Part shown: positions 31,870 to 58,695 of the stretch, one piece after another
Layout: every line of letters begins with the position of its first letter
How positions within the stretch are numbered: the first letter of the stretch is position 1
Assembly: GCF_002113885.1 (NCBI RefSeq)
Contig: NW_018408372.1
Coordinates: 384,874-448,873 of the forward strand
DNA: 64,000 nucleotides
Direction: 5' to 3'
DNA from: Mizuhopecten yessoensis
Lineage: Eukaryota
Notes under the pieces: generated by a model
Databases searched by the model: none
What the model saw: the letters and a program-made list of their open reading frames with translations, nothing else
What the model was told of the DNA's origin: nothing
Translations under genes and position numbers: made by a program

Positions 31870-33582
31870 TACTTTTTTAATAACTTAGTCCTCTTCGTCC
31901 CGTATTGGGCATAAGACATTAAAAATGCGTCTCCATTTGTGTCTGTCGTTGGCAGCGTGTTGTGCCACGCCCCATGAAAACCCCTTTTCTTTCAACTCCA
32001 GTGTTATGATGCGTCTCCATGTTGTCTTTGGACGTCCATGCTTCCTTTTCCCGGGTGGTGTCCATTTCAGTGCCATTTTGGGGGGTCAAATTCTGAGGGA
32101 CGAGGCCTAGCCGTCTCATTCGGTGCTGCTTGATTTCAATGGTGGCGTCCTGGCTGTTGGTTCGTCTGTATATCTCATCATTGGAGATCTTCATTGGCAA
32201 GAAGATGCGTCAGACTCACCTAAGGCAAACATTGTGGAAGACACTGATATTCTTGGTTACTCTCCAGCACTCTGGGCCATACAGCCACACTGGCTTCACA
32301 AAGCTGGATACAAGTCTGAGCTTTGTTGAGGTGCTGTATTGGCTTGTTTGTCCTTTTGTGCTGCATTGTCACTGGCCTGTTTGAGAGGGGCATCGTTTAA
32401 AGAGATGGAGGTTTCTGCCGTACTGTTGGCGCTTAAGACTTAAGCCTTTTGTCTTGGATGAGCTGATGGTAAGGCCAACCTTGTTGGCAAAGTTGCTCAA
32501 CCTATCGTCTTTCTGCTGAATGTGAGTTGGCTTGGTGGACAGCACAACAGGGCCAACAGCGAAGTCGATGTCTTCAATCTGGTAGAATGGGGTTCACTGG
32601 ATGCCTCTAGGCCTGTCGCAGGTGTTCTTCATCACCCAGTCGATGGCAACCAGGAAGCAAATTGGGAAGATGATACATCCCTGTTGCACGCCAGACCTCA
32701 CAAGAAACCATTCCGACAATTGTCTCTCGACTATGACACTGCATTTAAATTTCTGGTAGAAGAGTCATTGATACCGTTGTTGTCTAGGATATTCCATAGG
32801 GACTCTCGATGCACATTATCGAATGCTTTCTGGAAGTCGATAAAGTTGATGTACAAAGGGGTGTTCCACTCTATGCATTGGACTATGATGTTCATCAATG
32901 TGAAGACGTGGTCAATGCACGCTCTACCTTTTTCTGAAGCCAACCTGTTCCTGCCTTAGTGTGCTGTCTATGGCTTTTTTTAATTCTCTGCAAAAGACTT
33001 TGGAACTGAGAGGAGCGTTATGCCTCGCCAGTTGTCGCAGTTCTGAAAGTCACCTTTCTTGGGCAGATTGATAATCAGTACTTTTGTCTAAATCATCAGG
33101 GACAATTTTCTCTTCCCAGATGTCCTTGAAGAGGTCATACAGCACTTTACTTGAAGTGTCAACGTCTGTCTTCAGCATGTCTGCGTGGATGGAGTCGTGA
33201 CCTGCTGCTTTCCCGTAAGCCCTCATTTTGATGGCAGCTCTGACTTCAGCCTCGGTTGGCGGGCATGTATCGATTTCAATTAGTTCGGTGGCAGTTGGTG
33301 AATCAGGTGGGTCAGTTTTGTCCGTTCGGTTCAATACCTCCTGGAAGTGCTTGTCTTTGACTCGCATGGATCGGTTTGATGATGTACCAGTTAATCTTGT
33401 ACACCACCCTCATTTCTCCTCTTTGTGCTGCCTGCTCCGGCTCGCTTGTCATTCCTGGCACTTTTCTTGACCTCCTTGTCCTTAGCTTTGTATGCTTCCT
33501 TGGTTCTCGTGCGAAGTCTTTGGGACTTGGTGTCCAGCATATTACCTTTCAGGACCTTTCGCTCTTCTATCTCCGCCATTTA
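31870..33582 (-). mobile_element. 5'-truncated, degenerate RTE-clade non-LTR retrotransposon (reverse transcriptase pseudogene)
   Basis: Frameshifted fragments: HFQEVLNR...PPTEAEVRAAIKM..GKAAGHDSIHADMLK; GRACIDHVFTL..IIVQCIEWNTPLYINFIDFQKAFDNVHRESLW; GVQQG. RTE-type C-terminus ALKWTPPGKRKHGRPKTTWRR...LCPIRDEED* followed by a short taag-type tail. Confidence 0.92.
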
Positions 33583-34576
33583 CAGATATTATTCACCCTT
33601 TTTCTGGGTGTTTTCCTGTACCACTTACATGTACAACTTAAGAAACTAACATTGTTAACCGATAAATGTTGTCTGAAGTTTAGCTGTCGCTTATTTTCGT
33701 AATGAGGTCCAATTTATAATACAGCAAACATTTTTAAACAATATCATATGCAAAGATATTAAATGCTTAAGACGAATTGAATATTAGGCGAACATATATT
33801 TTACCGTCCAAAATTTGACTGGGCGAAATATTCCCGGATACAGTAATTTTTAATGACCTTTACCTGCAATTTTATTATGTCTGCTCTTCAATGGTAACAC
33901 ATGGGTGCGTGAACAGAGTTGCTTCCCCTTGCTACACGTTGCCTTTATTTTTTTCGTCCGGAAGTAGACGTCCAGTGGGGAAACCGGAAGAGTATCCTTG
34001 AAGCAAAGACATTTGTGTTTCAACCGTACATGAACATCTTCATATAGTGAAAACAATCTTCATGTTTTATAATATCTTAATTATTTTAGATAAAACCTAA
34101 TATAAATTCAGAGTGAAAAAGTCTATCACATAAAATGTGATACTAACAGGCATGCAACTTCGTTCAGAGATTATCATACTATGACCTCATAAACACGTCA
34201 CATTCCATCGGCGTTCATCGGTTATTTCCGGAAGGATGAAAAACGACATCTAAAATTTCATCAGCTTTTAATTTTAATTTGTCGTGAATATGAACGAAAT
34301 TATAAACATTTGTGAAAGTCTGGTTACCACTCAGTAAAAAAACAATGGATAATGCATTTATGTCAAATCAACAATAATTTTCCAGACAAACAACCCGAGT
34401 TCAAAACCCTTTTTAGCAACGTATTCCTTTTTTCACAACGCATGCCGATTTATAACTAGTAACAGGAAGAAAATGTTTAATTTCATTTTGAGACTTCATG
34501 TCGAAAAAACGACAATCTCAGCTACATCAAAGTATTACAATGTTTTCTTTTAATTTAATAAAAAAAAATAACTAAC

Positions 34577-40829: not shown

Positions 40830-43800
40830 ATGTACAAATTGTCCGGACTAGTTTTCTGTGGCTGTCTTGCGCTGGGATGTAAGTAAAGTATTAATTTGTT
40901 CAATTTTAATAATGATGTTCAACCTTCATATATTGTGTTTTGGTTGTAATTATCATCGCAGCGTAAGGACACATTGCCAATAAGATCCGATTAATTATTA
41001 TATTAATTTAAAGCTTTTTTGATAGCATTGTTTTTTGTGTTTAAATTATAACATTGCTTCCTTATAACCAATATTTGGAAATGTAACTAGCAGTGACATT
41101 GTTTTATGTAGGTATACCATTTACTTATATTCAATAATTGTTAATGAATTAGTAAAATATTTAAGTTTAGTTAATCTCATTAAATGTAATTTAACTGTTG
41201 AATACTCGATGGGTTTTTTTTTTGGTTTTTTTTAAAATCTATTTTTGGGTTGCCTTAAATGATAAATAGTGTTTACCTTTTAGTCATGTTTTTTTTTTTT
41301 TTTTTTAAATTATTAAAGTACATAATACGATCCGTAGAAAACCCATTAAGGTAGATGCATTACATATAGGATAACCACATTCCACTCGTTTTCTTATTGC
41401 GTCAGTTTTCTCGCAGACATTACAAACACTGTTTGCATCAAATAAAAGCCAAACATTTGTAGAAATTTTATTATTATTCAACATTTTGTTGAGGACAATG
41501 TAAAGAAAATTGACATCCTATAGATATTTCAAAAGTGTGCTGAAATGGTTTAAATCGTTACAAATCGTTGAAAGATATGTTACCTATTAAGATGTGGCAA
41601 CTATTTGACGACGTGCATTGAAGCCATTGCTTGTCATAGCCTTGCTAAATTAGTAGACAGTCTCTTTGACAGTACGCATGCATATTGCCTACTAAATCTC
41701 GATAAAAATAACCCTTACAAGGGCTAGAATCTATAAATAACTATTGATACGTATATGTCTATACAACAAATCCAACCATAAACAATCATGTTTGTCTACG
41801 TTGTCAATTTTCTGTCAGTAAAACAGTTTTACGACAGTAATAGCACTTCGAGCTTCATAAAACTGCCAGAGAAAGAAAGTGGTGTATATATGGTCTTAGA
41901 ATATGTGTATTGGCTTTGTATGCTTGCAGTCAATGAATTGTATGCTTAGTCCCTCATGGTATTGTGGCCACTGACACAGAATAAATGTCGTTGAAATAAA
42001 GGTTAAGCGATATATCGGAGAAGACGTATATGTCAATTGTTAAGGAAAAAAGGAAAAGAGACTTGGGTCGTTGAAGAACAGAACTACTGTTAGTTAGCAC
42101 CCAAAGTCAAATCGAATCTCATATGAAACGTGACAAATTGCAAGAAGCGCGGTAGTACTTCAATTGTAATGTTCCGTTTGCACTTGTATTGACTATGAAA
42201 GCTAATTGAAAACTGATCATTATTTATATTAACCAGTTTATGTTAGAAAACTAAACTTCTTCTGTCTTCAGTTTTCTCACTGAAGTTGTGTAATATGTGG
42301 TTGACTAATGACTGATTGAATGTTTACATCCTATACTTTTGACCAATAGGTTTTTACGAAAACACTTCGTTCAAAGTTGATGCTTACCAGTCTACTTTTT
42401 GCCGGCAATCACCATTTCATTAGAGCATTTGGCTTAAAGCGAGGTGGATAATGGATCGATAGAGATTTTATCGAAGTGTTACTATAACATGAATATTAAA
42501 TATAAATAGAGAGGGAACACCAACTAATTTTGTCATTAAAAAGACAACTTTACAAATTACGGATACATAACATACCGTTCCTTTCATCACCTTTATTTTG
42601 TAATGTAAACCAAGCCAAAAGAAATTCCAGTGATACAACATTACGACCAACATAGGGGACTGATAATCAGAAGATTTAGCCACGTTCTTACGTAAAATAA
42701 TAACTATTGATACGAATAAGGCTGTAAATCTTTGGTATATTGAAAACCTGTCTCTGTTGCATTCGAAAGATAATGTTAAACTTTTCGTAATTAATTAAAT
42801 TAAACATCACACAATGAGAAAACTTGATAAAAATCAATGCGCAATTTTATTTTATTTTTAAATGGCCATCGAAATAACACCGTTTTATACAGTTTTGTAT
42901 CGAATTTTAACAACGCTTAGCTGCTTAATGATTGCGACCTACTAGATTTATTTATTTTCAAAATCACCGTTTTTAAAATCTTTGTTTATGTAAATGCCGT
43001 TTTCCTACATTTCGCAGATGGGTTTTTCTTTGGAGGAGCCCAGAACAGTCTGCTTGGAATGAGCAGAGGTTCTGGTATGGCGGGGATGGGCGGCGCAGCA
43101 GACATGTTCGCAGGTTTATTCGGTACGGGTGGAGGTGCTGGTATGGGCGGGGATGCTGGTATGGGCGGAGGAGGTGCTGGTATGGGCCGAGGTGCTGGTA
43201 TGGGCGGAGGAGGTGCTGGCATGGGCGGAGATGCTGGTATGGGCGAAGGAGGTGCTGGTATGGGCCGAGGTGCTGGTATGGGCAGAGGAGGTGCTGGTAT
43301 GGGCCGAGGTGCTGGTATGGGCGGAGGAGGTGCTGGTATGGGCCTAGGTGCTGGTATGGGTGGTATGGGAGCTGGTGGAAATTCCATTGCTTCCATGATG
43401 AACTCCCTAAGTAGGATGTCTCTCTGTGGTGAGACTCCTTCCCGGATCAGATACAAGACAAGGGGCAGCTGTAGCCCATACGAGTGCAACAGGATGAGTA
43501 CCGGATATGACGTAGCCTGTTTAGGTCACTCTTGTTGTTGTAAAACATTCCAATGTACAGTTTTGTTAGGTAAGTACAGAGTATAGTTTGATATTATTGT
43601 CGTAATTCTACTGTTAAAGAAAGCATATGTAAAAACTATTTTGATGTTTAGTGTGTTTTCCATTATAATTCTTACTGGATATTGCATCATATGACCAACT
43701 GGGGTTGATGACGTATTCAGGATTTCTCTTGTTCTCACGATTCTTGTTTTTCATGTCAACTTTGAGTTTAGATTTTCATCTTGCGCATTGACGCTGCAAT

Positions 43801-44695
43801 ATATTGATATTTACTCATGATTATAATATTCCGTCTGGATGAATTTTGAATTCTAACGAGACAAAATATCATTTGAATGTTTTTTATGGGTAAATGTGAA
43901 AGAAATAAAACAATAACATTAAATAATAAGATATTTCTTTTACTTTTGATCATATTTTTTTTCATCATTCGAGTAACTTTACCTAGTCAAGGCAAATAAG
44001 AGAACAAATTTTAATATAAAATATACAGAAACCAAAAGCTTCTCATGATAATTACCTTATACTATATTAAAGAACTTAAATTTAATAAATATACTTAAAG
44101 TACCATATTATGAAAAGTGTGTAACCCTGAAATAGCTTTGTCGATAACTTATAATGTCACCAACCTTTTTGTCAGCTATGCCTTGGTGAAACTGTCAAAC
44201 TTATGTCTCCTAATGAAGTGAATTTCGCATGCATGTCAGTCTTAATTGTTTTTTTACTTGCTTGTCTATTTGTAAAATTATAAAATAAAATCATATTACA
44301 AATTCACATCAAACAAGTATACAAGTTATATATAATAATTATATCTACTGCAGTTAACTTTCTGTATAGATAGGGTGTTAAATAGTTGACTACATATTAT
44401 ATTGCGTTTCAAATACCTACCTAGATACGGTAAGAAGTTACAGTTAACTAGCAAAATCGATTATATTTTTTTATTTATATGTTATCTATCTGATTATTTT
44501 TTTTATTCTATTTTTATTTTCTAACATATAATTAAGGAGATATAACAATGTGTTATGATTATCTATGTACCCTATTATCACACACATATATACTTTAGTA
44601 CAGTATTGTGTAATAATGTAGTCAAATATCATTGTTAGGGTTTATTTTTTGACTGATGATCAGCATTTTTTTGTATTTCAGATGCAAGGAAATGA
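40830..44695 (+). CDS. Secreted Gly/Met/Ala-repeat protein with C-terminal Cys module (family member A, about 204 aa)
   Basis: Exons 40830-40878 (MYKLSGLVFCGCLALG|gtaagt), 43018-43569 and 44682-44695, with phase-1 introns. Twelve AGMG units are followed by LCGETPSRIRYKTRGSCSPYECNRMSTGYDVACLGHSCCCKTFQCTVLLDARK*. AATAAA at 45001. Confidence 0.85.
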
Positions 44696-47212
44696 TCTAA
44701 GGAAAATTTTAATTTTGAGATAGAAATGGCTGTGAACGAAGGTATTGACCATCGCTTGCTTAGCATTCGGACAATTGTGAAAGCATCAGATGTGGATGAA
44801 AGCGGCATCAGCAATTTACAATTATATCCGTCGGTGTAAAATAGTTAGCATATGACATAATTATGGAAATGAATTGCACATACAAAATTGCAAAGCCATT
44901 ACATTATTATCTGTCCAGCGATCGATTAAACGTTGTGGAAGGAATCAGACTATTGGCAACTTAAACCACATTCATAATGCAACACAATACAAATATGTAC
45001 AATAAAAAATGATTATTTCAATACGAACTGACAGGTGTTGATTATATTTTATAAGTTTTTCTTAAATGTTCACATGTATATGTCTATGTTATATTAAATA
45101 CCATTACATAAAATAAATACTTATTTTTTATGTCTTTTTGTGTATATTTTTCCTGACAACTCATTTTGAATAGTCGGTGATGCCTGAATAAATTCTAAAA
45201 ATCGAGGAAAGACAAGCCTGCTGTAAATCACTGCATAGTTAGATGACTGGTAGAGGAATGATATTAATTTTATTATTGGTGTCAGTTCCTTCGTTTTTCG
45301 GACAATTAGAACCTCGATGTTTCTTTTTCCAGTCATGCCTGCTCTTTTGTATTGACATTTTTTGCATGATTAGTTATCAATATCGTTTCAAGGTTATGCT
45401 ATTTCAGTTGGATTGCATTTTTAAACATTTCACGAGGAACCAAATGTGTCAATACAACTGCAATATTAAAACAAAATCGATAAAACAATGACAAAATATG
45501 TAGAAAACAAATAAAATCAGCAATGTATGTTTTCGCCAATATTGCTAAATTCGTCAGTTATATTTACATTTTGATAGAGTAGTTATTCTCTATTGAGTTA
45601 TTTCGAACAGTTCTTTGAACAGCAAATTAAGTGTTGGCAACAATGACATTTTGTTTACACCACAACAGAGATTGATGACGTTACAATAGCAAATGTTGTT
45701 TAAATATCACAACAACATTTGTCTTCTCAAATTATGGCAATTGAAGGATGCAGAGAAAATGTGAATATATATTTATAAAACCGTTCACACGCTCAAATTC
45801 ACATTATGTGCTCAATTTTTCGTGTTGTTGACAAATAAAGAAAATTTAACATTTTGCCAATGAGTCGAAAGAATTTAGGAGAAAATTAAAACTGAATAAT
45901 TTTCAACGTTTATTCAAAGACTATTTTGTAATGTCACATGATTAAAATGAATAACAAGAAAGTTGGTCTGAGTTCAAAGTACATACTTGATCATGAAAAC
46001 GGTTTCACTAATGCTCTGAGGTTTATTAAATTAACCCCATCATCTCTCTTAACATGACCTTGGATTTTACGAAGACGCACTATAGTTATGTCTAGCAATC
46101 ATTATGTCTTGGTTTTCAATATTCATGTATAAGTGTCTATATTGATAAACGGTCTGTACGCGGTGTTTTGGTGACCCACAAACTTGTTTCACTCCATTTT
46201 ACGAGAGACATTATAGAGGATATCACATATGATGTATGCAATATTCACTGTTCATGGACAAATTGTTTCGTCATTGTAGCTGGTATTAAGTGTATGTGTA
46301 TGGCGGATTGTACAAACGCAAAAAATAAATCACAAAAAACATAATGTAGAACTGAGACCAGTAGAGCAAGCCATTGAGAACGGCATTTTAATTTGAAAAT
46401 GTATAATCAAAGGATGCTTATTTTTTGACAAATGAATATTAACAATAGACCACCAATCACTACAATTTCATTCATGTCTTGATTTGATTACTCAAAAAGC
46501 AGTTTTATTGAATTTGAAGCAATGTTTAAGCATATTTGCGTCACTGCCAAAAAGTGAACCTATGAATAGGAAACTGTTTTACCTGCATGACATTAGCTTA
46601 AGGAAACACTTTCTAAAGCAACACAAATCAGCAAACGTGTCCTTGGAGTAAAACCGCAATACAGAACGAAAGGGACTTGAACCTTTAACCTTTGACGGTC
46701 GCTATAATCAGATCAGCTGCCTGATCAGCGATAGATACAAATCCCCTACAGTTATATCCAAAAATGAAGTTGAGGGAAGGTAACTGTTTATATGCAAATC
46801 TACAATTGAACTATATAGTGTTTTGCCTGCAGTTAAAACACATTTAACAGTTTATAATGTGGTCAATCTTTACACCAAGAATAAGTATTAAGCGTAAACA
46901 GCGCTGCAGTAACAATACCTTAATATAAAAAGATCCCATTTTTGCGAGTACAAGTTATGAACGGAAATGGAAATCTATTAAATGTGTTTCCCGGAAATAT
47001 TTGTCAAGATATCTACAATTCCTGTATATATTTAAGAACCTTTACGCTATTGAAAACGTCTTCATAGCATCAAAACTATTTTTTAAACTATAATTGCTTA
47101 GTAATAACATCCCTTTGTATTGTATTGAGGTTCGTCATGTAAACGTCAGCACAATTCAGTGAAGCGAAGCGTTGTGCTCGATTTACGTTTTGGTGTCCAA
47201 GCCAAAACAGTC

Positions 47213-47880
47213 ATGCTACGGCTTGATGATGCTAGTCGTGAAAAGGCCATTGGCTAAGGTCACCTGACGGTTACAAGAATTACAGCCACGCGTTCGACGG
47301 CCGATCGTCTGCTATCGGGAATGCCGCACATTATATCATGTACACAGGACTATTAAATCTGCACTCGTCATCTGCGCAATTGGAAAGGCAAGGCGGCAAG
47401 TTCTGCTTCCAACATCCCAAATCACCGTCTCAATAGTCCGTCGGTTAGCCGAGGTATGTCTATGTTCTTGACAACCGTATCGTGTGACCCGCCGTCATAT
47501 CAAAAGTCGCTTAGCGTGGTCACGACACAATTTACGATACTCTCTACAGCAACAAGTTTTATTAACGGTTGAGTACTGATAGTTACTTTATCGCTAAATA
47601 GAAGAATGCGAGAGTGTCGTAGGCGTGTTGCATATTGTCAGGACGCCTGCACGTTACGTCATGGTCGTTTTGGCGGTGGAAGATCGTGGTGTGAGGTTGG
47701 GTATCGGGATATATGTCTTGGTATCGTCGATAGTAGCCTGAACGCTGAACGAAAGAGGGAGCAGGTCTTTGTATCACTTATGGTTCCATCCATGGTGACA
47801 AATGAAATACTATCAATACAATAATATAACGTTTCTCATTCGGGCCAGTGTAAAACCAAAGATGTTTACCAAACCATGCA
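47213..47880 (+). pseudogene. Heavily decayed Tc1/mariner transposase
   Basis: Scattered fragments: MLRL...REKAIG, RHLRN, RLAW, VLLTVE (cf. VLFTDES), GRFGGG, IVDSSLNAER.REQV...VP. Many stops and frameshifts. Confidence 0.7.
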
Positions 47881-49081
47881 ATTATTGATATTAATAAGTA
47901 CATCTGAATAAATCAGGGTCCTGTCATTCACGGAAATAATATGAATGTTATATTTAATTCTCATATTATCTACGTCGTTGCATTAATTACATAAATGACG
48001 TCCGTTAATAGCATTTATAATACGGAAAAACATATGTTGGTCCACTCTTTGTCTCTTAATTGATTGATTACTTGAATATGCGTCATTCATATCCGGGCAT
48101 GCATGTTTTATTTTGGGCATGTTACAACCCCACAAGACAAACTGTATCACACAAAACATTAACAATGAAGAGAAAATGCTACGATTAATCTAATAATAAG
48201 TATTTGTTGACATGACACGCATGTTCGTCTATAGTGTATACCTATATAGACATGAGCGATGTATTATGTCTTATAATAAGGAGCGTATGCCTTGTTACAT
48301 ATAAAGTAAGAGTTACAGTGTTGCAAATCCTAAGTATGTTGTCACCTGCGTTACCGTATTTAATGTATTAATTATCTGTAACTTGTATTATTTTTATTAT
48401 AATCATAAACCTATTCTGTGACGTATGAGGTATTTATCTTATGGATTATTTTGCATTTCATATGCACTATATGAATAATGACCAAAAGGAGGTCAGACGA
48501 AATAGGGCATCAGCGTTAAATCTTAAACATAAGCGAAATTGTTTAGTTTAGGTAGTATATGAAATGACAACTGCCAATATGAAATACAAACGTATTAGTA
48601 ATACTTGATCAAAAAGCTATACAACTCATGATTATAAATCGTATATGTTATTGAGTGTAACACTGGGAATGGTGAAACAGATGTATCCGCAGACACATTA
48701 CAATGAGAGTATGATTGATGAAAAGACAAACAGTCTTTGCATGTCTTCTTCGCGTGATTCGCATAATTACAATTAAGTACAATAACTTTGTAAAATATTT
48801 TTGAGGAAATGAAAATGATAAACGACACTGCAGAAATTGGAGAATCATCTTTTAGATTGAGGCAAAACCAAACGTGATCAGTATACAGTGCAAATATTCT
48901 ACTGCAGCTGGCATAAATGAAACATATCATTTTTATTTTATTTATAGCATTTCCGTGGAGTATTTTTTTGTATTTCAGTCACGACAAATTACTCATATAT
49001 AATGATTTTATATCATTATGTATTTATAATAACAAAAGAGTAAAAGATGAGTGCTGTGTACGATGATAGTTGTGTCTCCAA

Positions 49082-51694
49082 TCATTGCCTCATTCGGAAG
49101 CGTTGTGAACGTCGCCTCTCCATAAATTTAAGCATCTTGTCTGCAAAGTAAAGAAAAGGTAATTTTTAAACACAAAACAGGGTGTTGAAAGTGTTGTACA
49201 TCATAGTTATCTAGTCCTCAGATTCAAATTTCAACAGCTGCGTTATATGAGACATAATATTGAAGAATTTATATCAAACTTCAATTTGTTTAATTTACAA
49301 AATATTTTGATAATTAGCATTTGTCATCTTATATGTAAATTAACATGAGATTGGTCATGGAAACGCTTTCGTAACAGAAATGTTTCAATGTAAAGGTAGC
49401 AGTTCGTATTTGGGGGAAAAAAGTATCAGTAAATTTAGAATACTAGGCTGGAGACCACAACAAAGTACTCACCAAGCATTTCCGCATGATCATTACTTGT
49501 TGCGCAGCATTTTCCTGAGTAGCATTCCATTTTACGCTGACAATCCGTATTGTCTACACACATCTTCCTTAACCTAATAGGCGTCTTGGAACACAGTGTG
49601 CGTTGCCTGTATATATCCATTTGGCTTAGCATTAGAAAAGTAGCATTCGATTGACCTCTGTTAGCATTGAGCAATCGTTGCATTGCGAAATTAAGTTGAA
49701 CCGGTATAGATTGTATTGAAAAGTGACGTCGCCTGGACACTTGCTGCATCGTTGGATCAATAAATGAACCTTCATTACCTCTGACAACAGTTTCGGGTCT
49801 TATGCGTTGAACAATTGCATGACTTGAACCCAAAATGCCTGCAAGATAAGGGAGAACCCGAGCTAAAGAGGATACAATAGTCACTGGACCTTGCCTTGCT
49901 AATTTGGTTATTGTTTTCTGTGTTGGTTGCCTCAAAGTGGGAGACAGTACTGAATCACCTGCTGGAGTCTTTTCAACATATTCCGTTTGTGAAGTCTTAG
50001 CAATGTTCGCCATAAAAAAGGGCAGTGTTTTCGACGTTGATGATGTGATATTTCTTGCAAACGTGTTGGTGACTATGACAGCGCTAGCGTCAGTTGTTCC
50101 GATTTTACTATTACTTATCATTTTTTGCGGTTGGTTTGATGCTGTTGTTTTTGTAATTGTATGTTTAATTTTGTTATCGATATTGGTTGTTGAACTTTCT
50201 TTGTGCAATTCCTTTGTGACACTACTTCGATGTGACTCTCCAACACCTTTAGGCGAATTAAACATTTCAAGTGATATGAAATCACTCCGGGCATCGCCTT
50301 TGACCACAATCCTTGTTTCGTTCTGGTAAGGTGTTAGAGATGAAGTGTCAGTTTCAGTTTCTGTTTTCGCGGTCGAAATTGTCGTTTTTCCGCTTTTTCC
50401 CCTTGCTGTTTCAAAAAATGTATGTTCTGTTCGTTTAGATGTAGCTGACTCCATCGTCTGTTTTGGAGTTTCAGGCGATTTATTGGTTTCTTGTTCTGAC
50501 GGTTTCGTAATTTTGCTATATTTGCTTGTAGCTCTTCTTCTTGATTTAAGTCCAGATATCTTGGTTGACCTTAGCGGTGAACTTGTGGTTACTTTGACCG
50601 CGGTTTCTGAGGTTTTAAGCCGTTTGCTACTGGCGGTTTGAGTGACCGTGTGTCGTTCTGTTTTAGACCGATGTGACGTTTGCTTCGTAGCACGTGTCGA
50701 CTCTGATGTTTTAGTGGATGGTTTTGTCCTCTTCCTTCTTCTTGCTGATCTCCTTGATGATCTTCTTTTTGAGCGCCTAGCTGATCTTCTAGTAGAACTG
50801 TTGATTACTTTGGTCATAGTGGGCGGCGTTGTGTTGCTTGTACTTCTTGATAACTCCGCGGTTTTGCCTCTGTCTTCTTTATTAAGTGCTGTATTCGGAA
50901 CATCAGAGGAGGAACTTGCTAACGATAGTGCTTCGTTCTCTAAAACTTGGTTCCCATTTGCATTCGTAATTTCTATGGCTGGTGATTGAGTTGATATAGC
51001 TTTAATAAGAAAACGTGCATGGATTAAAAACAAATATACATAAATGTAATGCTGTTGTATTCATAATATCTTTTCATTCAAATCGAAATGATATGGCTTT
51101 GATTTTTTCTAATTGTGTGTTTGTTTGCTTACTTGTTTGTTATACTCCTCTGCCTCGAGAAAAATAAAGAAGCACATAATTACGTTTTGCATACACATCA
51201 CCAAACAAATTTTCAGTTCTGTTCTTGCATATGGTTAAGTTTATCAAAACACTTCTTGTATAACAAAAAGGTGTCACCATATTAAAATCACAGAATACTT
51301 CCTAGTTGGTCTGCAATATTCTATTTATGACCTCGTGTCTTTATACAATTTAAAATTAGCTTACTCGTGTTAGATAATCATGATAGCCAGCCCTCATTCT
51401 TTTGGGAACCTCTATGTTTTATTGTCATTCTCTTGAATAGTTTATTGAAAGCGAACAACATATTGAATAACTTAATTCAGAAATAAACACTGATATATAG
51501 ATGGTAATGTAAAAGTAAATCGAATAATCAAATATGTCAGAACTATTTTCCTTCATATGTTCACCTGGAAAAATTGTATTGCATTCCATTAATATCTTTT
51601 TGAAGCAGTTTCGAATAAATAAATTCTTACCTGAAATAAATACTGACAAAAGAAAAGACCAAAATAATGTCAAATCCATTTCCAAATTGATCAT
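49082..51694 (-). CDS. Secreted Ser/Thr/Lys/Arg-rich mucin-like protein with C-terminal Cys module (family member B, about 544-549 aa)
   Basis: Exons 51694 (or 51679)-51631 (MDLTLFWSFLLSVFIS|gtaaga), 50999-49473 and 49140-49082, with phase-1 introns. Ends LCSKTPIRLRKMCVDNTDCQRKMECYSGKCCATSNDHAEMLDKMLKFMERRRSQRFRMRQ*. Confidence 0.88.
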
Positions 51695-51737
51695 TCCAAG
51701 AATTGATATATCCTTTTCGTTATGAGATATGTTGTCC

Positions 51738-51744
51738 TTTTATA
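51738..51744 (-). promoter_or_regulatory. TATA box of member B
   Basis: TATAAAA on the minus strand about 45 bp upstream of the first ATG. Confidence 0.55.
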
Positions 51745-53365
51745 TTGATAAAGACCTTTTTTCATTGGTCCGAAATAGTTCCGCTTGGATTTGATCCAGT
51801 TCCCCTTAACACTGTCGTTAAAGTAGTGTAAGTTCACAATACCATTAATACATTATAAACACAATTCATAAAGACTTTTTCCTCCACAATCTGACACCAA
51901 CATTTATGTATTTCGAGGCAGCAGTAGCCGCTTAATATAATGGTGATTAAATGTCATGTATTTTTTACATCGATTTAATCCAATAATATTTCGTATGAGT
52001 TTTGGTTTTTCAATGGCATCAAATGGATTTAAATTACACACATGTCTTTTACACATTTTTTTATGAATGTTCAATCAACCTAACAAAGCTTTAAAATGGT
52101 CGATGAGCATTAGTAAATATTTTTTTAAGTTGTAACATAATTAATTATCTAGTGTAATGTCCTCATGTTTACATCAAATACCAATTAGTGTATATAAGTA
52201 TTGTGTGACTTTGGAGTACTTATTTATGTAACACCGTATCGTCTACAAGAAAAAAAAGCGTTCAAATGCATGTCAATATCGACCTTTCCAAGAATTGATA
52301 TATAACATACGCTACGTAAAATGATGTCCTATTACATTGATAAAGACCTGTGCGTTCAAAAGTAAGTCATGTTTACAATAGATCGTTAACAACTATGAGA
52401 GCAGATTGAACTACACTTCTGAAAATCACTTGCAAAAACATAAGTGCTACTTCAGTGTTAGTATCTCTTAAGGTTAGTTTTCTCATAATCTGTTGATTTT
52501 GTGTTTTGATCTTCATATTTTGTCTTATGCAATACATTTTGGTCCTGTATATGACACAACATTCTTGACAAAGCTTTTTATATAAAAACTAATCAGAATG
52601 TCCACACATTTTAACGTTTTATCAAAAACAAATCTACTTGGTTTTGTAAAATTTGTAACGGTAAACATGTTTGTGATGATTATTTATAAGTATTGCTTTA
52701 ATGCTTAATAAAATTGAATAGAAAACAAATACATTTGTTGTAAATGTCCGTGTATTGAGGTATGAGGAAACCTGTCATCAGTAAGAGAGGACAGCTATGA
52801 GCCTAATTTGTATATATGTTAATCCTAGTAGTTTATTGCTTTTAATTGTGACATTAAATAGATAACGTCCTCCGCTAGGAATAAGGCACAACCAGGTACC
52901 TCCAAACACCTAAACACATATTTGTTTATAACAAGAACACACAATTAATGTGTCCTATGGCAAGTCACCTATGATTAAAAGTTAAGTGACATTTTATTCC
53001 TTACGCTTAAGTGGTATTGACAGCGACGATCTGCCACAGTTTTCTTTTCTTTTAATCATCTCTCATGATCTTAACCTCGAAAGGAATATTTCTTCACGAC
53101 ATATATCTATTAGTCGTTTTCACGGCATTATTACGTGACAAGTAATTACCAATTTGCGGAATATTTAATTACTACTGATGACGTAACAAGACAGGCGAGA
53201 TCATTATGGTGTAGACGTGGAGCATTATGTCTATGAATATGATAGTAATAGAAGCGTATCAGGTTTTAAATATTCATCAGATCATATTCTAGTTTAAAGA
53301 CGTTTCGACAGCTGGCGGAGACGTCGCGATTTTAAATGAGATATTGTTTTGAGCTTTGCACGTAC

Positions 53366-53372
53366 TATAAAA
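53366..53372 (+). promoter_or_regulatory. TATA box of member C
   Basis: TATAAAA about 140 bp upstream of the ATG at 53510. Confidence 0.55.
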
Positions 53373-53509
53373 AGTCCCACTATCTTCCGGAATACCATAC
53401 AAGGTCTGACTGTGGTGGTTGTTGGCTCATTCGGGGAGAGCGTCAGAATAGCACGTTCCTGAAGTAGGAGTTCTTTTGTTTGAAGTTCTACGGAACAGGA
53501 AATAGTAGC

Positions 53510-56153
53510 ATGGATACGCCAACAATGTTTTTATGCACATTCCTTCTGATGATGATTGTTTCAAGTAAGTTTCTAAACAAATAGGGCTATTTCGTTTATG
53601 ATTTACTTTTGATGATTTAATATACTTCATTGACGCAAAGTAAGGTTGCAATATCAACGAGGCGACATATATTAGACGTTTGTAAATAATATCTGTAGCC
53701 TACCTTATTGACTCGTAGTATTTTATTGACAACCATTAAGGCGACATAAAGCAATGATTTACAGAAAGATAGCATACACCATTGACTCATAGTAAAGTTG
53801 TTTATTTCATAAACACACAGTAATGTAGATGCATTATCGTCTCACAGTAAGACATATTTGTAACGTATTTCGTCGAATTGTAGTATTTTATCGACACTCA
53901 TTACGGCAACAAATATTATTTATTCATAGTAAAGTAGTATGCTTATCTAATTGACTCACATTATTGTAGTATCATCGACTCAGGAAAGCTAGCTTATATC
54001 ATTGACAGGTATAAATACGTCGAGCATATCCCGTTGATTCGTAATATTTGAATATTTCTCACAAATCATTGACTCACTGTATGGTAGCAAACATCCTTGA
54101 CTTACAGTAAGGCATCAAATATAAATGACTCATCGTAAAGTAGCAAAACAAGAAACAAGTTATTTCAAAGGATGTTAATTGAACATTCCGATATAATTTG
54201 AAATATTTTGTATAAGGTATATGCCTTGCTGGGTTACATTGATAACTCTACATAGCAAAAATATGCTTCCCTACATTAAGCATATCTAATTCAAACTTGT
54301 TTCCAATTTGCATTCGTAATTTCTATGGCTGGTGATTGCGTTGATATAACTTTGATAAGAGAACGTGCATGGACTGAAAAAACTTAGACACAAATGTAAT
54401 GTTGTTGTATTCATAATATCTTTTGATTCACAGAAATTTACAGCAATCATTTAAAATGCTGTTCTTTACTAGATACAAAAATGCATCGTTTGTTTAAGGT
54501 ATAGTTGCTTTATAATGATGTTCTAGAAAATGTAGTTTTTTAATTATTATATTTATTGTACATTTATGAAGAAAATATAAACTGGTGTGTAATATTTGCT
54601 GATTAAATAATAACTTTATTAAACGCAATGTTTTGAGGGCCGCAATGGCTGATTGGTTCAGTCGTCTGACCTTCTACAATTACTAGCCCATAACCCCTAG
54701 GGGCTTTAAAGCACAAACGAACGAAAACACTATTTTTGAATATGTAAGGCTGCAGTGTTAATAATACAAACATGTATGTTTAAAGGTGTCACGGCGTTAT
54801 CCCCGATGGCGCAGAGCATGAATGCAGAAATCATGTCAGACTACATGGACCTACAAAGAAAGGTTATGAGATATAGGATGTTTCAGTCTTCAATGGGAGG
54901 ACCGAATGGTGGGAATACTGTTCTTCCTGCTGGAATACAAAATCTCCTCGCCTCTTTTGGAGGAATGGTTCCATCAGAGATGTCATCTGTCCAAACATCG
55001 GTAAATAGTGGGTCACAGACAGGTAACTTTATGCCAGAAGTAGCACCAACACTTCAAAACATTGGACTAAAAAATCCACAACCTGCAACAAAAACAGCAA
55101 ACGCAAAGACATCATCAAAAAAGAGCAGTTTAAAATCAAAAAGTGGTAAAGTTACACATCCCAGCAATGCAGCTCAGACACCAAAGCAGTCATCAAGTAA
55201 ACAAACCCCAGTGACAGATATGGTGAGTAATGTACCAACGGCTATAGGCTCTACTCTGGAACAAAATCCAATGATTGGGCTCGAAATGGCCGCTTTGATG
55301 AATGCAGGATCGATGATGAATACTGCAGGAGGATCAATGTTTGACCAAGGACAGACATCAAATCCAAGTAATCCTACCCTAAAGGGAGTTCCGCAGATGG
55401 CATCATCAGGAATGAACAATGGTCAAGCTGGTATGTCGTTGCCACAAGCAAATCTTGGACAGATGTTAATACAACACAACTTATGCTCCGAGACGCCGTC
55501 CAAGTTGAGACAGATGTGTATGACGAATAAGGACTGCTCTCACAAAATGCAATGTTTTACTGGGAGATGCTGCGCTAAAAACCTCGACCATGCAGAAATT
55601 CTTGGTAAATATTACTTTCACTACTTTCCTAAGTTTGATTTAATGTATGTTTTGTATAAAAAGACAAATTATGATGTAGTAAGCCGTAAACGATAAATTT
55701 TGGTTACTTGTATAGATTCAATGTTGCGACGGTAAGGAATATTTGAATCCTGTTAAACCAGGTCCATTGAAGAGCTGTGGAGATCACACGTACCATATAC
55801 ATAACGTTAAGAACAGAGTTTTGACATCAATTACTGCTAGAAAATATCATTTCAGAACCTTACCTACATCCCTGGGCAAAATAGCCTACACCCCATTGGC
55901 TCCTCTATAGACTCTCACTGCAGTTCGAAGTTGTGTGTTATGAGATGGTTTAAGATAATTCATTTAAGGATCCAACAGCGAACTACCAAAATAAAGCATT
56001 TCAATATAAAATATGTACAGCATTTAAACAAAGAAAACACAACTAACATTGTGCTGATGTGTCCGTACCGCTAAATTTATATTTTGACTTTCAGACAACA
56101 TGGTTGAACATTTGGAGAGACAACGTGCCCGTCAAGCGTGGATGAGACTATGA
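53510..56153 (+). CDS. Secreted Met/Ser/Gln-rich protein with C-terminal Cys module (family member C, 310 aa)
   Basis: Exons 53510-53564 (MDTPTMFLCTFLLMMIVS|gtaagt), 54786-55604 and 56095-56153, with phase-1 introns. Ends LCSETPSKLRQMCMTNKDCSHKMQCFTGRCCAKNLDHAEILDNMVEHLERQRARQAWMRL*. The last coding exon is 59 nt, the same as in member B. Confidence 0.88.
53700..54150. repeat. Degenerate tandem repeat (about 33-bp unit) containing four perfect TGACTCA sites
   Basis: Recurrent attgactca.agtaaagtagca-like unit. TGACTCA at 53783, 53952, 54070 and 54126. Confidence 0.6.
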
Positions 56154-56649
56154 CACCGTGGCAGATGAATCAGCGACTGTGTCATGGTGACATTTGATAA
56201 ATTATTCCATTCCTAATTTATTCATTATGTGGGATATTTTGTATACACAATGCCTAATGCTTAAACAGTAATATAGATAGTGTACCTGCTGTAGTTTGCT
56301 TAACTTAACTGCTTGTGTAACTATGGATAATTTTGTATCTAAAATATTTCCTCTGAGAGTGGACCCACAAAAAAGACGTTCACTTTCTGTCGTACAGTGC
56401 CAAGATGCCATATGTTTGAATAAGTACGTCAACTATTGATACAATTCAAAGTTTTATAATGATTTTAATTAAAATGTTACAATTTATAATCTTCTTGTAT
56501 TATTTCCTGTTGGATCAAATGTAGGGGCAGTGGTGGCCAAGTGGTTAAGGCGACTGACAATTTGCTAACACTAGCCATAGGTCATAATTAGAAGATAGAC
56601 CAATGAAGTAACGCCCGGTGTGTTACCCAGTCAAGGGTTAGGAAACGGT

Positions 56650-57169
56650 TTGGTTTAGTATAGTTTAACGTCTTATCGACAGCTATAGTCATTTAAGGAC
56701 GACCTCCCCTGTGTGCAAGATGCATGCGTGTAGTGTATGCCTGTGTTTTGGGAGGATGATATATGTTCGTGCTTGTCTCCTTATGATAGCACGGAACTGA
56801 TGCCGACTTTATAGTGCAAACTCAATGAAACTGCCGAAGACACCCAGCAGGACACCCCACCCGGTCACATTATACTGACATCGGGCGAACCTGTCGTGTC
56901 ACTCCTAAATTGCTGAGCGTTAAGCAGGAGTAGAAACTACCATTTTTACGGACTCTGGTATGTCTCGGCCAGGGGACAGAACTCAAAGCCTTCCTCACAG
57001 GGGCGAACGCTCAACTAAAGGCCAAAAGTGAGGCATTGTCAAGGGAGACATTAGAAAGAGGAAAGTTGTTTAGAAAGAAGAGAAAAGATAATATCATAAA
57101 TTTAGTCGCCTCTTACGATCATGCAATGGGGGCAGCAGGTACAATTATTACGCCCTACCTGCAGGGACT
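56650..57169 (-). mobile_element. Complete SINE-like retroelement (Meta/RUDI-like body) with 13-bp target-site duplication
   Basis: gttaggaaacggt is present at 56637-56649 and 57170-57182. The minus strand reads: 5' leader, decayed tRNA-like head, ...gtcagtataatgtgaccgggtgggg... body, aaacc-type tail. Confidence 0.85.
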
Positions 57170-58695
57170 GTTAGGAAACGGTGTCAAGGCACATCAGCCA
57201 TTTTAGTTGGCTTGGATCGATTCTGATTTTGATTTCACATACATGCTGTCGTGTTCCATCTGAAGCTCACTTCAGTAGCATGTGTCAAGGACTCGTGAAA
57301 TAGATGCAGTCAAAGTGATAACATCACGTGGAAAGGGGCGGCATGGATTCAAGACTACAACAGCATTACTCAAATATCTATCAGTTTGCAGAAACGACAA
57401 ATATGTTTAATATCGAGTGTTAAATATAAGAAGCTGGATTTGAGACGTCTCTAATACATTGGTATCTTTATACTTCAAAAATATAGTTAGCATGATAAAA
57501 ATGCGAGTAGCTATTGTAACGAGAAATTTTGCATACAATAGAATTGAACAGTTTACAAAATATGACAAAGTAGTTTGAAACGAGTATTAAAATCTTTGTT
57601 GGTAACACTAATTGTTTTTTGCAAAAACGTTACACATCCTCCTACAATACAATCAAACAATTGCTGCTATAATAAAGATAAAACATATTTTTGTATTAAA
57701 TCAAAACATTTTTGGACAACCATTTGTTTCATTCTGGTGCTTTCTGGAAAATGTTTAATGAAGAAATTATAGAAAAACAAATAAAGACTCTGTATCTCGA
57801 AAAGAAGTTATAGTAATTAGAATGATACCGATACATTTCTTTTTAAGTAATCATCGTAATTAGATAACACATCGTTCAATATTCAAACGTGTACATTACA
57901 TACATAATATTACAAAGGGATTAAATAACCAATGCCGGCAATGTAAACAACTTTAACACCCATGCAATTTATCAGAAATATCGTCTGTTACAATGCACTG
58001 ATCAACAGGAGTTCGTTACAAATGTCTGAAATACACATATTCTGTAGACCTACTGACACATATGTTACAGACCTACTGATATGAGTCACAGCACACATAA
58101 ACATTTCGGATATTTGTAGCGAAATTGTGCTCCGTCGCAAGAGCACTCACTTCAAACTCTATCAGTATCACGCGTCTCGCAGCCACAGTTTCCTCAGCTT
58201 TTGACGACATGTCAAATAACGAGGCTTTTGTAGAATCTACCGACTGTAGTCTGATTCCCATACAATCAACAAATACATTCACGCCTGGATTCTTCACAAA
58301 ACTTTTCTCTCTGCTCATTTAACTTCCAAAAATAATTCCCTCGTGGAGGTCAAGGTCGGATTCACGGTGTTCACTGTATTTATCCATGGGCGAAATTTGT
58401 TCCGGGGAAAAAACGAAACAATTTCAAATCTAACTATCAGCTCAGATTTATATTGATAAACTTAAATCACCCTATAAACATTTCATACGCAATTGCATTG
58501 ATACTGAATTGTGGAATAAATTGAAGTGTTGGTTAAAACTTCAAAGTCCGACTTTGTTTGTCAATCAGCAAGCGGCAACACGCTGTTCCGACTATTTAAC
58601 GAATTTATGTGGACTGTCGATAAGGCGGGATTTTTTTATTTTAAATATAAATTGTAATTTAAAAAAGAACATAATAGGCAGAGAAAACTTAAATA

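What the first reader, a model, noticed from the sequence alone, without database searches (positions are those of the whole stretch)
40830..56153. Three-gene family: conserved secretion exon and Cys cap around completely different low-complexity bodies
Seen: genes A, B and C share one architecture. Each has a signal-peptide exon, a phase-1 intron, one large exon ending in LCxxTPxx(L/I)R...C..C..C..CC...L, another phase-1 intron starting an Asp codon, and a short basic last exon. B and C align closely over about 60 C-terminal residues (LCSKTPIRLRKMCVDNTDCQRKMECYSGKCCATSNDHAEMLDKM vs LCSETPSKLRQMCMTNKDCSHKMQCFTGRCCAKNLDHAEILDNM). A is an 8-Cys variant. The bodies are unrelated: Gly/Met repeats (A), about 450 aa of Ser/Thr/Lys/Arg (B), Met/Ser/Gln (C). 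Known: signal peptide plus repetitive low-complexity domain plus small Cys domain is typical of molluscan shell, ligament and byssal proteins, and the 6-Cys spacing resembles Lustrin/WR1-type modules. Inference: a modular materials toolkit in which a shared disulphide cap assembles or cross-links chains with different mechanical properties.
Basis: partly seen in the sequence, partly recalled or inferred. Interest (0 to 1): 0.85.

Follow-up and report, generated by a model that had tools for sequence, protein, structure and literature searches.

The report
Scallop secreted-protein family sharing a cysteine cap
Three neighbouring scallop genes encode secreted, mostly unstructured proteins that share only a small, conserved cysteine-rich end module; the family is real, scallop-specific and undescribed, but its proposed role as building material is untested.

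Summary
Genes A (+), B (-) and C (+) each have a signal-peptide exon, a phase-1 intron, one large low-complexity exon ending in LCx(E/K)TPxx(L/I)R plus 6 or 8 Cys, a second phase-1 intron splitting an Asp codon, and a short basic last exon (A: only D-A-R-K).

- **Homology:** the B and C caps match at E 6e-19. A is a distant member, linked by the motif, the intron position and the conserved gene order.
- **Conservation:** the same A(+) B(-) C(+) order, followed by a fourth paralog D, occurs in Pecten maximus, Ylistrum balloti and Argopecten irradians. The caps are under purifying selection.
- **Distribution:** a profile of the three caps against 1.84 billion proteins found only scallop proteins, all auto-named or uncharacterised.
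- **Known families:** there is no Pfam, PDB-sequence or fold match, so the Lustrin/WR1 resemblance is not supported.
- **RNA:** contigs from three studies show C's first intron spliced exactly as predicted and C well expressed. B showed no junction and only background depth in those runs. A was not tested.
- **Bodies:** D shares one block with C and another with B, so the bodies are not wholly unrelated.
- **Function:** the tissue is unknown, so the materials-toolkit idea stays an inference.

Another note on this window (s1-517197) already covers A's repeat.

The parts
40830..40878 (+). Gene A exon 1: signal peptide MYKLSGLVFCGCLALG plus the first base of a split Tyr codon; donor gt at 40879
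   Evidence: Sequence. tblastn of the Ylistrum and A. irradians orthologs P0001/P0002 residues 1-16 hits 40830-40877. P. maximus has a near-identical exon.
43018..43569 (+). Gene A exon 2: Gly/Met/Ala body (134 aa) plus the 8-Cys cap (from LC at 43422); donor g|gtaagt at 43569/43570
   Evidence: ORF; composition and Cys count; 86% cap identity to scallop orthologs.
43131..43360 (+). 39-nt tandem repeat, 5.9 copies, 92% matches: the 13-aa unit GAGMGGGGAGMGR inside A's body
   Evidence: Tandem Repeats Finder.
44682..44695 (+). Gene A exon 3 coding part: completes Asp, then A-R-K-stop; acceptor tttcag at 44676-44681
   Evidence: DNA alignment with the last exon and 3' UTR of P. maximus (cag|acgcatga = D-A-stop) and Ylistrum. 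No RNA evidence.
51631..51694 (-). Gene B exon 1: signal peptide (MINLE)MDLTLFWSFLLSVFIS plus g of a split Ala codon; donor gtaaga. TATA-like tataaaagg at 51744-51736
   Evidence: Sequence. A 16-codon MDL/MEV...(V/I)S+G|gt exon sits at the equivalent place upstream of B in P. maximus, A. irradians and Ylistrum. No RNA junction seen.
49473..50999 (-). Gene B exon 2: 467-aa Ser/Thr/Arg/Lys body (net charge +43) plus the 6-Cys cap (49596-49474)
   Evidence: Intact 508-codon frame. tblastn to P0007/P0008/P0005/P0006 at E 1e-23 to 6e-28.
49082..49140 (-). Gene B exon 3: completes Asp, then KMLKFMERRRSQRFRMRQ-stop
   Evidence: Sequence. Same length as C's tail and alignable with it and with the RefSeq orthologs' tails.
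53510..53564 (+). Gene C exon 1: signal peptide MDTPTMFLCTFLLMMIVS plus a of a split Ser codon. TATA box tataaaaag at 53366-53374
   Evidence: Junction 53564->54786 (GT..AG) in contigs of three runs from three studies. One spliced contig starts at 53400.
54786..55604 (+). Gene C exon 2: 231-aa Ser/Gly/Met/Asn/Gln body with the N-terminal PMxQSMNAxIM block, plus the 6-Cys cap (55481-55603)
   Evidence: Depth 525/196/18 against 36/14/0 in the intron. 819-nt contigs in two runs start at 54786, the same length as the predicted exon. 40% identity to P. maximus P0004 over the full length.
56095..56153 (+). Gene C exon 3: completes Asp, then NMVEHLERQRARQAWMRL-stop
   Evidence: Sequence; matches the P0004 tail DNMLEQPGMRL. 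The junction lies outside the stretch laid with reads.

Best explanation
A, B and C are three members of a four-member tandem family (A, B, C, D) found so far only in scallops. Each protein enters the secretory pathway through a signal peptide. It then carries a long, Cys-free, probably disordered body whose composition differs between paralogs:
- A: an elastomer-like xAGMG repeat body.
- B: a polycationic Ser/Thr-rich, mucin-like body.
- C: a Met/Ser/Gln/Asn-rich body.

Each protein ends in the only folded part. This is a module of about 55-65 residues made of an amphipathic helix, LCxETPxR, a disulphide-stabilised core with a beta hairpin, and a second helix that runs into a short basic tail.

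The most likely role is as components of an extracellular matrix or secreted material. The cap would serve as the folded handle that lets different polymers be secreted, docked or assembled in the same way.

Shown here: the gene structures, the homology, the conserved cluster, purifying selection on the cap, and splicing and expression of C.

Inferred only: secretion, disorder, the structural role, and any assembly or cross-linking by the cap.
For: Architecture and homology:
-.

The family is recovered as a unit:
- A profile of the three caps against 1.84 billion representative proteins gave six clear hits, all Pectinidae RefSeq models.

Conserved order and orientation:
- A(+) B(-) C(+), with D(+) following where the fetched DNA reaches it (P. 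maximus, Ylistrum): P. maximus, Ylistrum balloti and Argopecten irradians.
- The donor G|GT sits at the same codon position after the cap in every member.

Selection on the caps:
- Non-synonymous difference (pN) is 0.05-0.13 for A and 0.13-0.32 for B and C.
- Synonymous difference (pS) is 0.5-0.85.
- dN/dS is at most 0.07 for A and about 0.2 for B and C.

Bodies:
- A's body varies in length and sequence but keeps a Gly/Ala/Met/Pro 'AGMG' theme in P. maximus (GAPAGMG repeats), Ylistrum and A. irradians.
- Such repetitive, rapidly changing bodies are typical of structural polymers (general knowledge).

Expression:
- C is spliced as predicted and lies far above intron depth in three studies.

Fold:
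- AlphaFold2 gives a moderately confident compact module: pLDDT 75.7 with blocks up to 87 for the B/C/D type, and 67.1 for the A type.
Against: - No tissue, proteome or localisation evidence was obtainable, because the run labels are coded.
- B was not expressed above background in the three runs where C is abundant. The paralogs therefore need not act in one material.
- The 6 or 8 Cys can all pair within the module, so nothing points to intermolecular disulphides.
- The fold models rest on only 12 sequences.
- A's relation to B, C and D rests on 18 aligned columns plus gene structure and position.
- 'Scallop-only' may partly reflect poor annotation. The RefSeq B models lack the signal exon, and no model came from other annotated scallops.
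Confidence: 0.55

Rival explanations
1. The cap is the product and the bodies are pro-regions. The precursors would be cut just before the cap to release a disulphide-rich peptide of about 60 residues, such as a hormone, an antimicrobial peptide or a protease inhibitor.
For: - B-type proteins carry R-K-R directly before A-L-C in P. maximus, A. irradians and Ylistrum.
- A's cap is 78-90% identical across four scallops while its body changes in length and composition.
- The weak best fold matches are cystine-dense peptides: squash knottins at E 0.6 and probability 0.66, and scorpion-toxin or defensin-like peptides for A.
- The cap ends in C-x4-CC, as beta-defensins and big defensins do (general knowledge).
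Against: - There is no conserved basic cleavage site in C (IQHN-LC), D (YMQD/YMQR-ELC) or A (LSRM-S/T-LC).
- The window's own B has only R-Q-R.
- The helix before the first Cys is conserved and is modelled as part of the module.
- The bodies keep conserved blocks of their own.
- There is no Pfam hit to defensin, WAP or toxin families.
- A 467-residue pro-region would be unusual.
Confidence: 0.2
2. These are mucus or gel glycoproteins rather than shell, ligament or byssus proteins. They would be lubricating or protective secretions of mantle, gill or gut epithelia, or an egg coat, with the cap acting like the C-terminal dimerisation knot of gel-forming mucins.
For: - B and D bodies are Ser/Thr/Lys/Arg-rich. 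NCBI's pipeline auto-named them 'mucin-5AC-like', 'proteoglycan 4-like' and 'serine-rich adhesin for platelets-like'.
- C is expressed without B in three runs, which suggests different cell types.
- The gene next to D in Ylistrum carries discoidin (F5/8 type C) and chitin-binding (CBM_14) domains, as in peritrophic or mucus matrices.
Against: - The auto-names reflect composition only; no mucin or cystine-knot domain was found.
- The cap has 6 Cys, against 11 in the mucin CTCK (general knowledge).
- A's AGMG repeats resemble elastomers rather than mucins.
- Met-rich composition is a known hallmark of bivalve ligament and insoluble shell proteins (PMC7591529).
Confidence: 0.2
3. The similarity is chance among low-complexity ORFs, or the genes are decaying pseudogenes.
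For: - A versus B pairwise is only E 0.014.
- B has no RNA support.
Against: - B versus C is E 6e-19.
- All frames are intact.
- The cluster is syntenic in four species.
- dN/dS is well below 1.
- C is spliced and expressed.
Confidence: 0.03

Closest known systems
Abductin (scallop hinge-ligament rubber; Cao, Wang & Bayley 1997, as summarised in PMC9999432)
   Same: Secreted, small, from scallops. Gene A's body is 46% Gly and 15% Met in short tandem repeats, the same unusual Gly/Met chemistry.
   Different: [quoted passage not shown]
- A has GAGMGGGGAGMGR units and an 8-Cys cap.
- No abductin was retrieved at E up to 0.01 with A as query.
- Earlier notes place the abductin genes elsewhere in this genome (unchecked).
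Spider silk spidroins (conserved non-repetitive terminal domains around divergent repetitive cores)
   Same: Paralogs keep a small folded terminal domain while the repetitive cores differ and give different materials. This is the closest analogue to the 'shared cap, different bodies' logic (general knowledge).
   Different: There is no sequence or fold relation. The spidroin C-terminal domain is a helical bundle of about 100 residues that forms a dimer, and its function is demonstrated. Here assembly by the cap is only inferred.
Gel-forming mucins and von Willebrand factor: C-terminal cystine-knot (CTCK) dimerisation domain
   Same: Signal peptide, a long Ser/Thr-rich disordered body and a C-terminal Cys module, as in B and D.
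   Different: No Pfam Cys_knot hit. The cap has 6 Cys in about 30 residues, against 11 Cys in about 85 residues. No odd Cys is left free for an interchain bond.
Met-rich insoluble ligament and shell proteins of Pinctada fucata (LMP, NU-5; PMC7591529)
   Same: Bivalve extracellular proteins with Met-rich low-complexity regions. The ligament matrix there needed a disulphide reductant to be opened (PMC7591529).
   Different: No detectable homology: the cap profile found no pearl-oyster protein. They come from different lineages and their domain content is not shared.
Lustrin A Cys-rich repeats and the WAP four-disulphide core
   Same: Small Cys-dense modules in molluscan matrix proteins. WAP also has a central CC.
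   Different: No Pfam match to either family. The spacing C-x10-C-x5-C-x5-C-x4-CC (B, C) or C-x14-C-x4-C-x10-C-x4-CCC-x4-C (A) fits neither pattern.

Membership tests
Abductin | Tandem GGFGGMGGGX decapeptides making up most of a mature protein of about 116 residues | tested here: not met
   A's repeat is a 13-aa unit GAGMGGGGAGMGR, 5.9 copies, with no Phe in the unit. The composition is similar: G 46%, M 15%.
Abductin | Ala-rich N-terminus with two Cys and two Tyr, and no C-terminal Cys domain | tested here: not met
   A has a 49-residue C-terminal module with 8 Cys and no Cys in the body. The description of abductin is from PMC9999432.
Abductin | Detectable sequence homology to A. irradians abductin | tested here: inconclusive
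   The search with A exon 2 returned only cap-bearing orthologs at E up to 0.01. Low-complexity filtering may hide a repeat-level relation, and no abductin sequence was held for a direct comparison.
Abductin | Located in the resilium | not testable with these tools
   Run labels are coded and no ligament proteome was found.
Lustrin A Cys-rich domain (Pfam Lustrin_cystein) | Match to the Pfam profile | tested here: not met
   No hit at E up to 10 for the three window exons, nor at E up to 1 for eight orthologs and paralogs.
WAP four-disulphide core | 8 Cys with C-x5-C-x5-CC-x3-5-C-x3-4-C and a match to the Pfam profile | tested here: not met
   No Pfam hit. B, C and D have only 6 Cys, and A's spacing differs.
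Mucin/VWF C-terminal cystine knot | Match to the Pfam Cys_knot profile; an 11-Cys pattern | tested here: not met
   No Pfam hit; 6 or 8 Cys.
Knottin / inhibitor cystine knot | Three-disulphide knotted fold | tested here: inconclusive
   The best Foldseek rows are squash trypsin inhibitors at E 0.64, probability 0.66, 26 columns. VIA-align wide gave Z of at most 3.8, with no cystine-knot entry among the 50 rows shown.
Beta-defensin / big defensin | Match to the Pfam defensin profiles; C-x6-C-x3-4-C-x9-14-C-x4-6-CC | tested here: not met
   No Pfam hit. Only the terminal C-x4-CC is shared.
New scallop cap family (defined here) | Signal exon; phase 1-1 body exon ending in LCx(E/K)TPxx(L/I/F)R plus 6-8 Cys; G|GT donor splitting Asp or Glu; short basic tail | tested here: met
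   Met by A, B and C in the window and by 8 RefSeq proteins, plus unannotated exons, in three other scallops.

The most novel reading that the evidence does not exclude
The cap is a previously undescribed, scallop-specific docking domain. It would couple chemically different disordered polymers (an AGMG elastomer, a polycationic mucin-like chain and Met/Gln-rich chains) into one extracellular composite such as the swimming scallop's resilium. That would supply the assembly or cross-link system that is still unknown for abductin-type rubber.
Probability: 0.15. Interest if true: 0.75.

Novelty: new variant of a known kind. Interest (0 to 1): 0.45.

Why it matters
Scallops swim by clapping their valves against a rubber-like hinge pad. 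How that protein rubber is cross-linked and assembled is still unknown (PMC9999432).

This cluster provides a defined, conserved and unannotated set of secreted proteins with one shared folded module. One member has an elastomer-like Gly/Met/Ala/Pro body.

If the proteins turn out to be in the ligament or shell, the cap would be a compact natural 'handle' for assembling different polymer blocks, which would interest biomaterials design.

If they are not in the ligament or shell, the result still has value:
- It defines a new lineage-restricted domain family.
- It corrects annotation: the RefSeq B-type models lack their signal exon, and the names 'dnaJ homolog', 'mucin-5AC-like' and 'proteoglycan 4-like' are unsupported by any domain match (a Pfam scan gave none).

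Tried and rejected
- **Word-indexed homology search with C's cap region:** no candidates. This says little because of the word and length limits.
- **Pfam on the window exons and on 8 relatives:** only an EB-module hit at E 0.26 and a spurious Utp14 low-complexity hit below its cut-off.
- **PDB sequence profile search:** best E 0.08 to thyroglobulin, then prokineticin and toxins at E above 0.3.
- **Fold searches:**
  - Foldseek on both cap models had no row at E 0.001 or better.
  - VIA-align wide gave Z of at most 3.8, mostly generic helix-loop-helix matches.
- **A's last exon:**
  - A first scan required at least 8 residues and missed it.
  - A scan for AG|AYGCN-stop also failed, because this species has two extra codons.
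  - It was found by aligning the orthologous 3' ends.
- **Paralog D inside the window:** none found by tblastn or by a signal-exon scan. By synteny it should lie beyond 64000.
- **Literature:**
  - No paper holds the RefSeq accessions or the cap motifs.
  - Supplements of the scallop genome, shell-proteome, foot-secretome and toolbox papers were either not held or had no match.
  - A search for 'abductin' alone was swamped by 'abducting'.
- **Exact-product look-ups of exon 2 of A and C in public assemblies:** nothing.
- **Raw-read RNA run X21:** no reads on the stretch, which is no test.
- **Joined models:** the spliced proteins of the window were never assembled. Searches and folds used single exons by reference, and RefSeq orthologs covered the exon 2/3 junction.


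Full report
**1. What is in the window**

The window has about 35% G+C and is eukaryotic, with large introns. Three long open frames stand out between 40.8 and 56.2 kb: 43059-43586 (+), 49435-51033 (-) and 54755-55696 (+). Reading the flanks gives three-exon models for all three genes.

- **Gene A (+):**
  - Exon 1 is 40830-40878, encoding MYKLSGLVFCGCLALG plus one base.
  - Exon 2 is 43018-43569.
  - Exon 3 starts at 44682 and completes Asp, then Ala-Arg-Lys-stop, ending at 44695.
- **Gene B (-):**
  - Exon 1 is 51694-51631.
  - Exon 2 is 50999-49473.
  - Exon 3 is 49140-49082, encoding D-KMLKFMERRRSQRFRMRQ.
- **Gene C (+):**
  - Exon 1 is 53510-53564.
  - Exon 2 is 54786-55604.
  - Exon 3 is 56095-56153, encoding D-NMVEHLERQRARQAWMRL.

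All introns are phase 1, and the second intron always splits g|aY. Each gene has a TATA-like box 50-145 nt upstream of its ATG (read directly; this is weak evidence). All Cys residues lie in the C-terminal module: 8 in A and 6 each in B and C. The bodies have none.

The single N at 30051 was left alone.

Single exons were used by reference, and RefSeq orthologs covered the exon 2/3 junction.

**2. Is it more than chance?**

Yes.
- B and C caps align at 49% identity over 65 residues, E 6e-19.
- A is distant: E 2e-6 to C and E 0.014 to B.
- A profile-profile comparison of four A-type caps against nine B/C/D-type caps gives probability 88% and E 3e-6. It covers only the 18 columns around LCxETPxR(I/L)R.
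- A's membership therefore also rests on three further points: the identical position and phase of the following intron, the same three-exon plan, and its fixed place in the cluster.
- The motif LC.[EK]TP occurs in the six-frame translation of the 64 kb window only at the three caps.

**3. Relatives elsewhere**

*Profile search.* A profile of the three caps was searched against 1.84 billion representative proteins. It found six convincing hits (E 1e-16 to 3e-11). The three further hits (E 7e-5 to 8e-4) look unrelated: two repeat proteins and a multi-Cys protein.

*The clear hits.* All six are RefSeq models from scallops:

| Species | Accessions |
|---|---|
| Pecten maximus | XP_033758444, XP_033758446, XP_033758447 |
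| Ylistrum balloti | XP_060081468, XP_060081437 |
| Argopecten irradians | XP_069118742 |

Two further searches added XP_069115534 (the A. irradians A-type) and a 404-aa A. irradians D-type, P0012.

*Names.* The source names are 'uncharacterized' or composition-driven: mucin-5AC-like, proteoglycan 4-like, serine-rich adhesin-like, and dnaJ homolog for the A-type. None of these proteins has a Pfam domain.

*Other lineages.* No oyster, mussel or other mollusc protein was found. Unannotated genes would escape this search.

*Synteny.* Fetching the loci showed the same order and orientation in three other scallops.
- The order is A(+), B(-), C(+), then a fourth paralog D(+) of 404-426 residues in P. 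maximus and Ylistrum, where the fetched DNA reaches it.
- An Ig-domain gene lies upstream of A in Ylistrum, as it does in the window (V-set exon at 19472-19930).
- D is not in the window. By synteny it should lie just past 64000.

*A's last exon.* A's last exon in the window was found by aligning the orthologous 3' ends. P. maximus and Ylistrum have cag|ac gcN tga (D-A-stop). The window has cag|at gca agg aaa tga.

*B's signal exon.* B's signal exon has no RefSeq support, because the B-type models start inside exon 2. However, a 16-codon exon MDL.../MEV...(V/I)S + G|gt sits upstream of B in all four species. The models are therefore truncated, not the gene.

**4. Constraint**

Between species, synonymous sites in the caps are near saturation (pS 0.5-0.85). 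Non-synonymous differences are far lower:
- pN 0.05-0.13 for A.
- pN 0.13-0.32 for B and 0.30 for C.

Where dS could be estimated, dN/dS is at most 0.07 for A and about 0.2 for B and C.

The bodies evolve much faster. C is 40% identical to its P. maximus ortholog overall.

A's body varies between species:
- Six 13-aa GAGMGGGGAGMGR units in the window.
- GAPAGMG repeats in P. maximus.
- An Ala/Pro/Met stretch in A. irradians.
- A short Gly/Met stretch in Ylistrum.

The bodies are not wholly unrelated, however:
- C and D share an N-terminal block: PMxQxMNA(D/E)IMxDxMxL(R/Q)(R/K)K...LPAAxIxM.
- B and D share a block about 100 residues before the cap: GPxxxxSxLA(R/Q)x(L/Y)P...(L/F)G.

This fits an ancestor resembling D, with B and C each keeping one block and A keeping only the cap.

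**5. RNA evidence**

Twenty runs of the same organism hold part of 49080-56160, but their labels are coded, so no tissue is known. Contigs of three RNA-like runs from three studies, plus one raw RNA run, were laid on 49000-54999.

*Gene C:*
- The junction 53564->54786 (GT..AG) is present in all three contig runs.
- Exon 2 depth is 525/196/18, against 36/14/0 in intron 1.
- One spliced contig starts at 53400, about 30 nt after the TATA box.
- Two runs have an 819-nt contig that starts at 54786. That is the length of the predicted exon 2, as expected if the assembly graph branches at the donor at 55604. This is an inference, because the far end lies outside the laid stretch.

*Gene B:*
- One run has a contig that is continuous from 49000 to 50985. 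It therefore runs through intron 2.
- Its depth is 13, no higher than the intergenic DNA in that run (19-37). The other runs have only scattered depth of 1-6 over B, and no junction was seen.
- B is therefore not detectably expressed where C is abundant.

*Gene A* was not covered, because only one read-laying run of at most 6 kb was allowed.

*Raw RNA run X21* had no reads on the stretch, which is no test.

**6. The cap as a module**

- *Sequence:* no Pfam family matches. This includes the Lustrin, WAP, cystine-knot and defensin models that Pfam holds. A PDB sequence profile search gave nothing better than E 0.08.
- *B/C/D-type model:* built from a 12-sequence alignment with P. maximus C as the first row. 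It has mean pLDDT 75.7, with 82-87 over the core. It shows a helix before the first Cys, a core with a beta hairpin, and a helix over HAE(I/M)L(D/E)N.
- *A-type model:* weaker, at pLDDT 67.1.
- *Fold searches:* only weak, short similarities to cystine-dense peptides (squash knottins at E 0.64; scorpion-toxin or defensin-like peptides for A). VIA-align gave generic helix-loop-helix rows at Z of at most 3.8.
- *Conclusion:* I conclude only that this is a small disulphide-stabilised domain with no recognisable relative. The disulphide pairing could not be read, because model coordinates are not exposed.

**7. How it most likely works**

Shown:
- A conserved four-gene cluster.
- Signal-peptide-like first exons.
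- Cys-free low-complexity bodies.
- A constrained C-terminal Cys module.
- Expression and splicing of C.

Inferred:
- The proteins are secreted.
- The bodies are disordered.
- The cap is the common folded handle.

I favour an extracellular-matrix or material role (confidence 0.55). The reasons are:
- Repetitive bodies that change fast but keep their composition class are typical of structural polymers (general knowledge).
- A's AGMG theme resembles elastomers.
- Met-rich composition marks bivalve ligament and insoluble shell proteins (PMC7591529).
- C is abundant in three independent RNA-like data sets.

Whether the cap cross-links chains is open. An even number of Cys allows fully internal pairing.

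Rivals:
- **Cap as released peptide (0.2).** This is supported by RKR before the cap in B-types and by the very high conservation of A's cap. It is weakened by the lack of a cleavage site in A, C and D.
- **Mucus, gel or egg-coat glycoproteins (0.2).** This is a variant of the matrix idea outside shell and ligament.
- **Chance or pseudogenes (0.03).**

**8. Comparison with known systems and novelty**

- Gene A is abductin-like in chemistry only. It fails abductin's repeat and domain features. Earlier notes from this scan place abductin genes elsewhere in the genome (I did not check them).
- The closest analogy for 'one conserved terminal domain, different cores' is the spidroin family, with no homology implied.
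- The kind of protein (signal peptide, low-complexity body, small Cys domain) is familiar in molluscan matrices.
- The cap family, its cluster and its restriction to scallops are not described in any paper I could find. I therefore rate it a new variant of a known kind, with moderate interest.
- The missing piece is tissue and proteome evidence.

Noticed in passing
window 51600-54800 (runs X1, X5): In RNA-like runs, the DNA between B and C is covered without a break at about the depth of C's intron (19-37 in X1). A spliced contig in X5 extends upstream to 53107, well before the TATA box at 53366. This could be an upstream start for C, antisense or read-through RNA, or DNA carry-over.
   Followed up: partly
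L001:6893-6940 (-), L003:9228-9275 (+), L002:18871-18918 (-): The RefSeq B-type models (XP_033758444, XP_069118742) start inside exon 2 and lack a signal peptide. A conserved 16-codon signal exon with a phase-1 donor lies about 0.8-1.4 kb upstream in each species, so the public models look truncated.
   Followed up: yes
window 19472-24357 (+): Several Ig-like exons lie here; 19472-19930 matches Pfam V-set at E 9e-6. They sit upstream of gene A, as an Ig-domain gene does in Ylistrum (L002:1-438), which extends the synteny beyond the cluster.
   Followed up: partly
window 31900-33700: A G+C-rich island (45% against about 35%) with ORFs on both strands that look like a retroelement fragment. The 105-aa ORF at 33053-33367 (-) had no Pfam hit.
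   Followed up: partly
L004:16304-21924 (-): In Ylistrum, the gene after paralog D encodes a protein with discoidin (F5/8 type C) and chitin-binding (CBM_14, weak) domains. It is a possible extracellular-matrix neighbour of the cluster.
   Followed up: no
window 56520-57170: A repeat with a tRNA-like head (ggggcagtggtggccaagtggttaaggcg...) lies just after gene C. ARAGORN calls no tRNA there. Another note on this window (s1-517282) treats it as a SINE.
   Followed up: partly
window 42986-43489 (-): The 167-aa Pro/Ala/Ile-rich ORF opposite A's repeat is the mirror image of the Gly/Met repeat on the other strand. It is not a separate gene.
   Followed up: no
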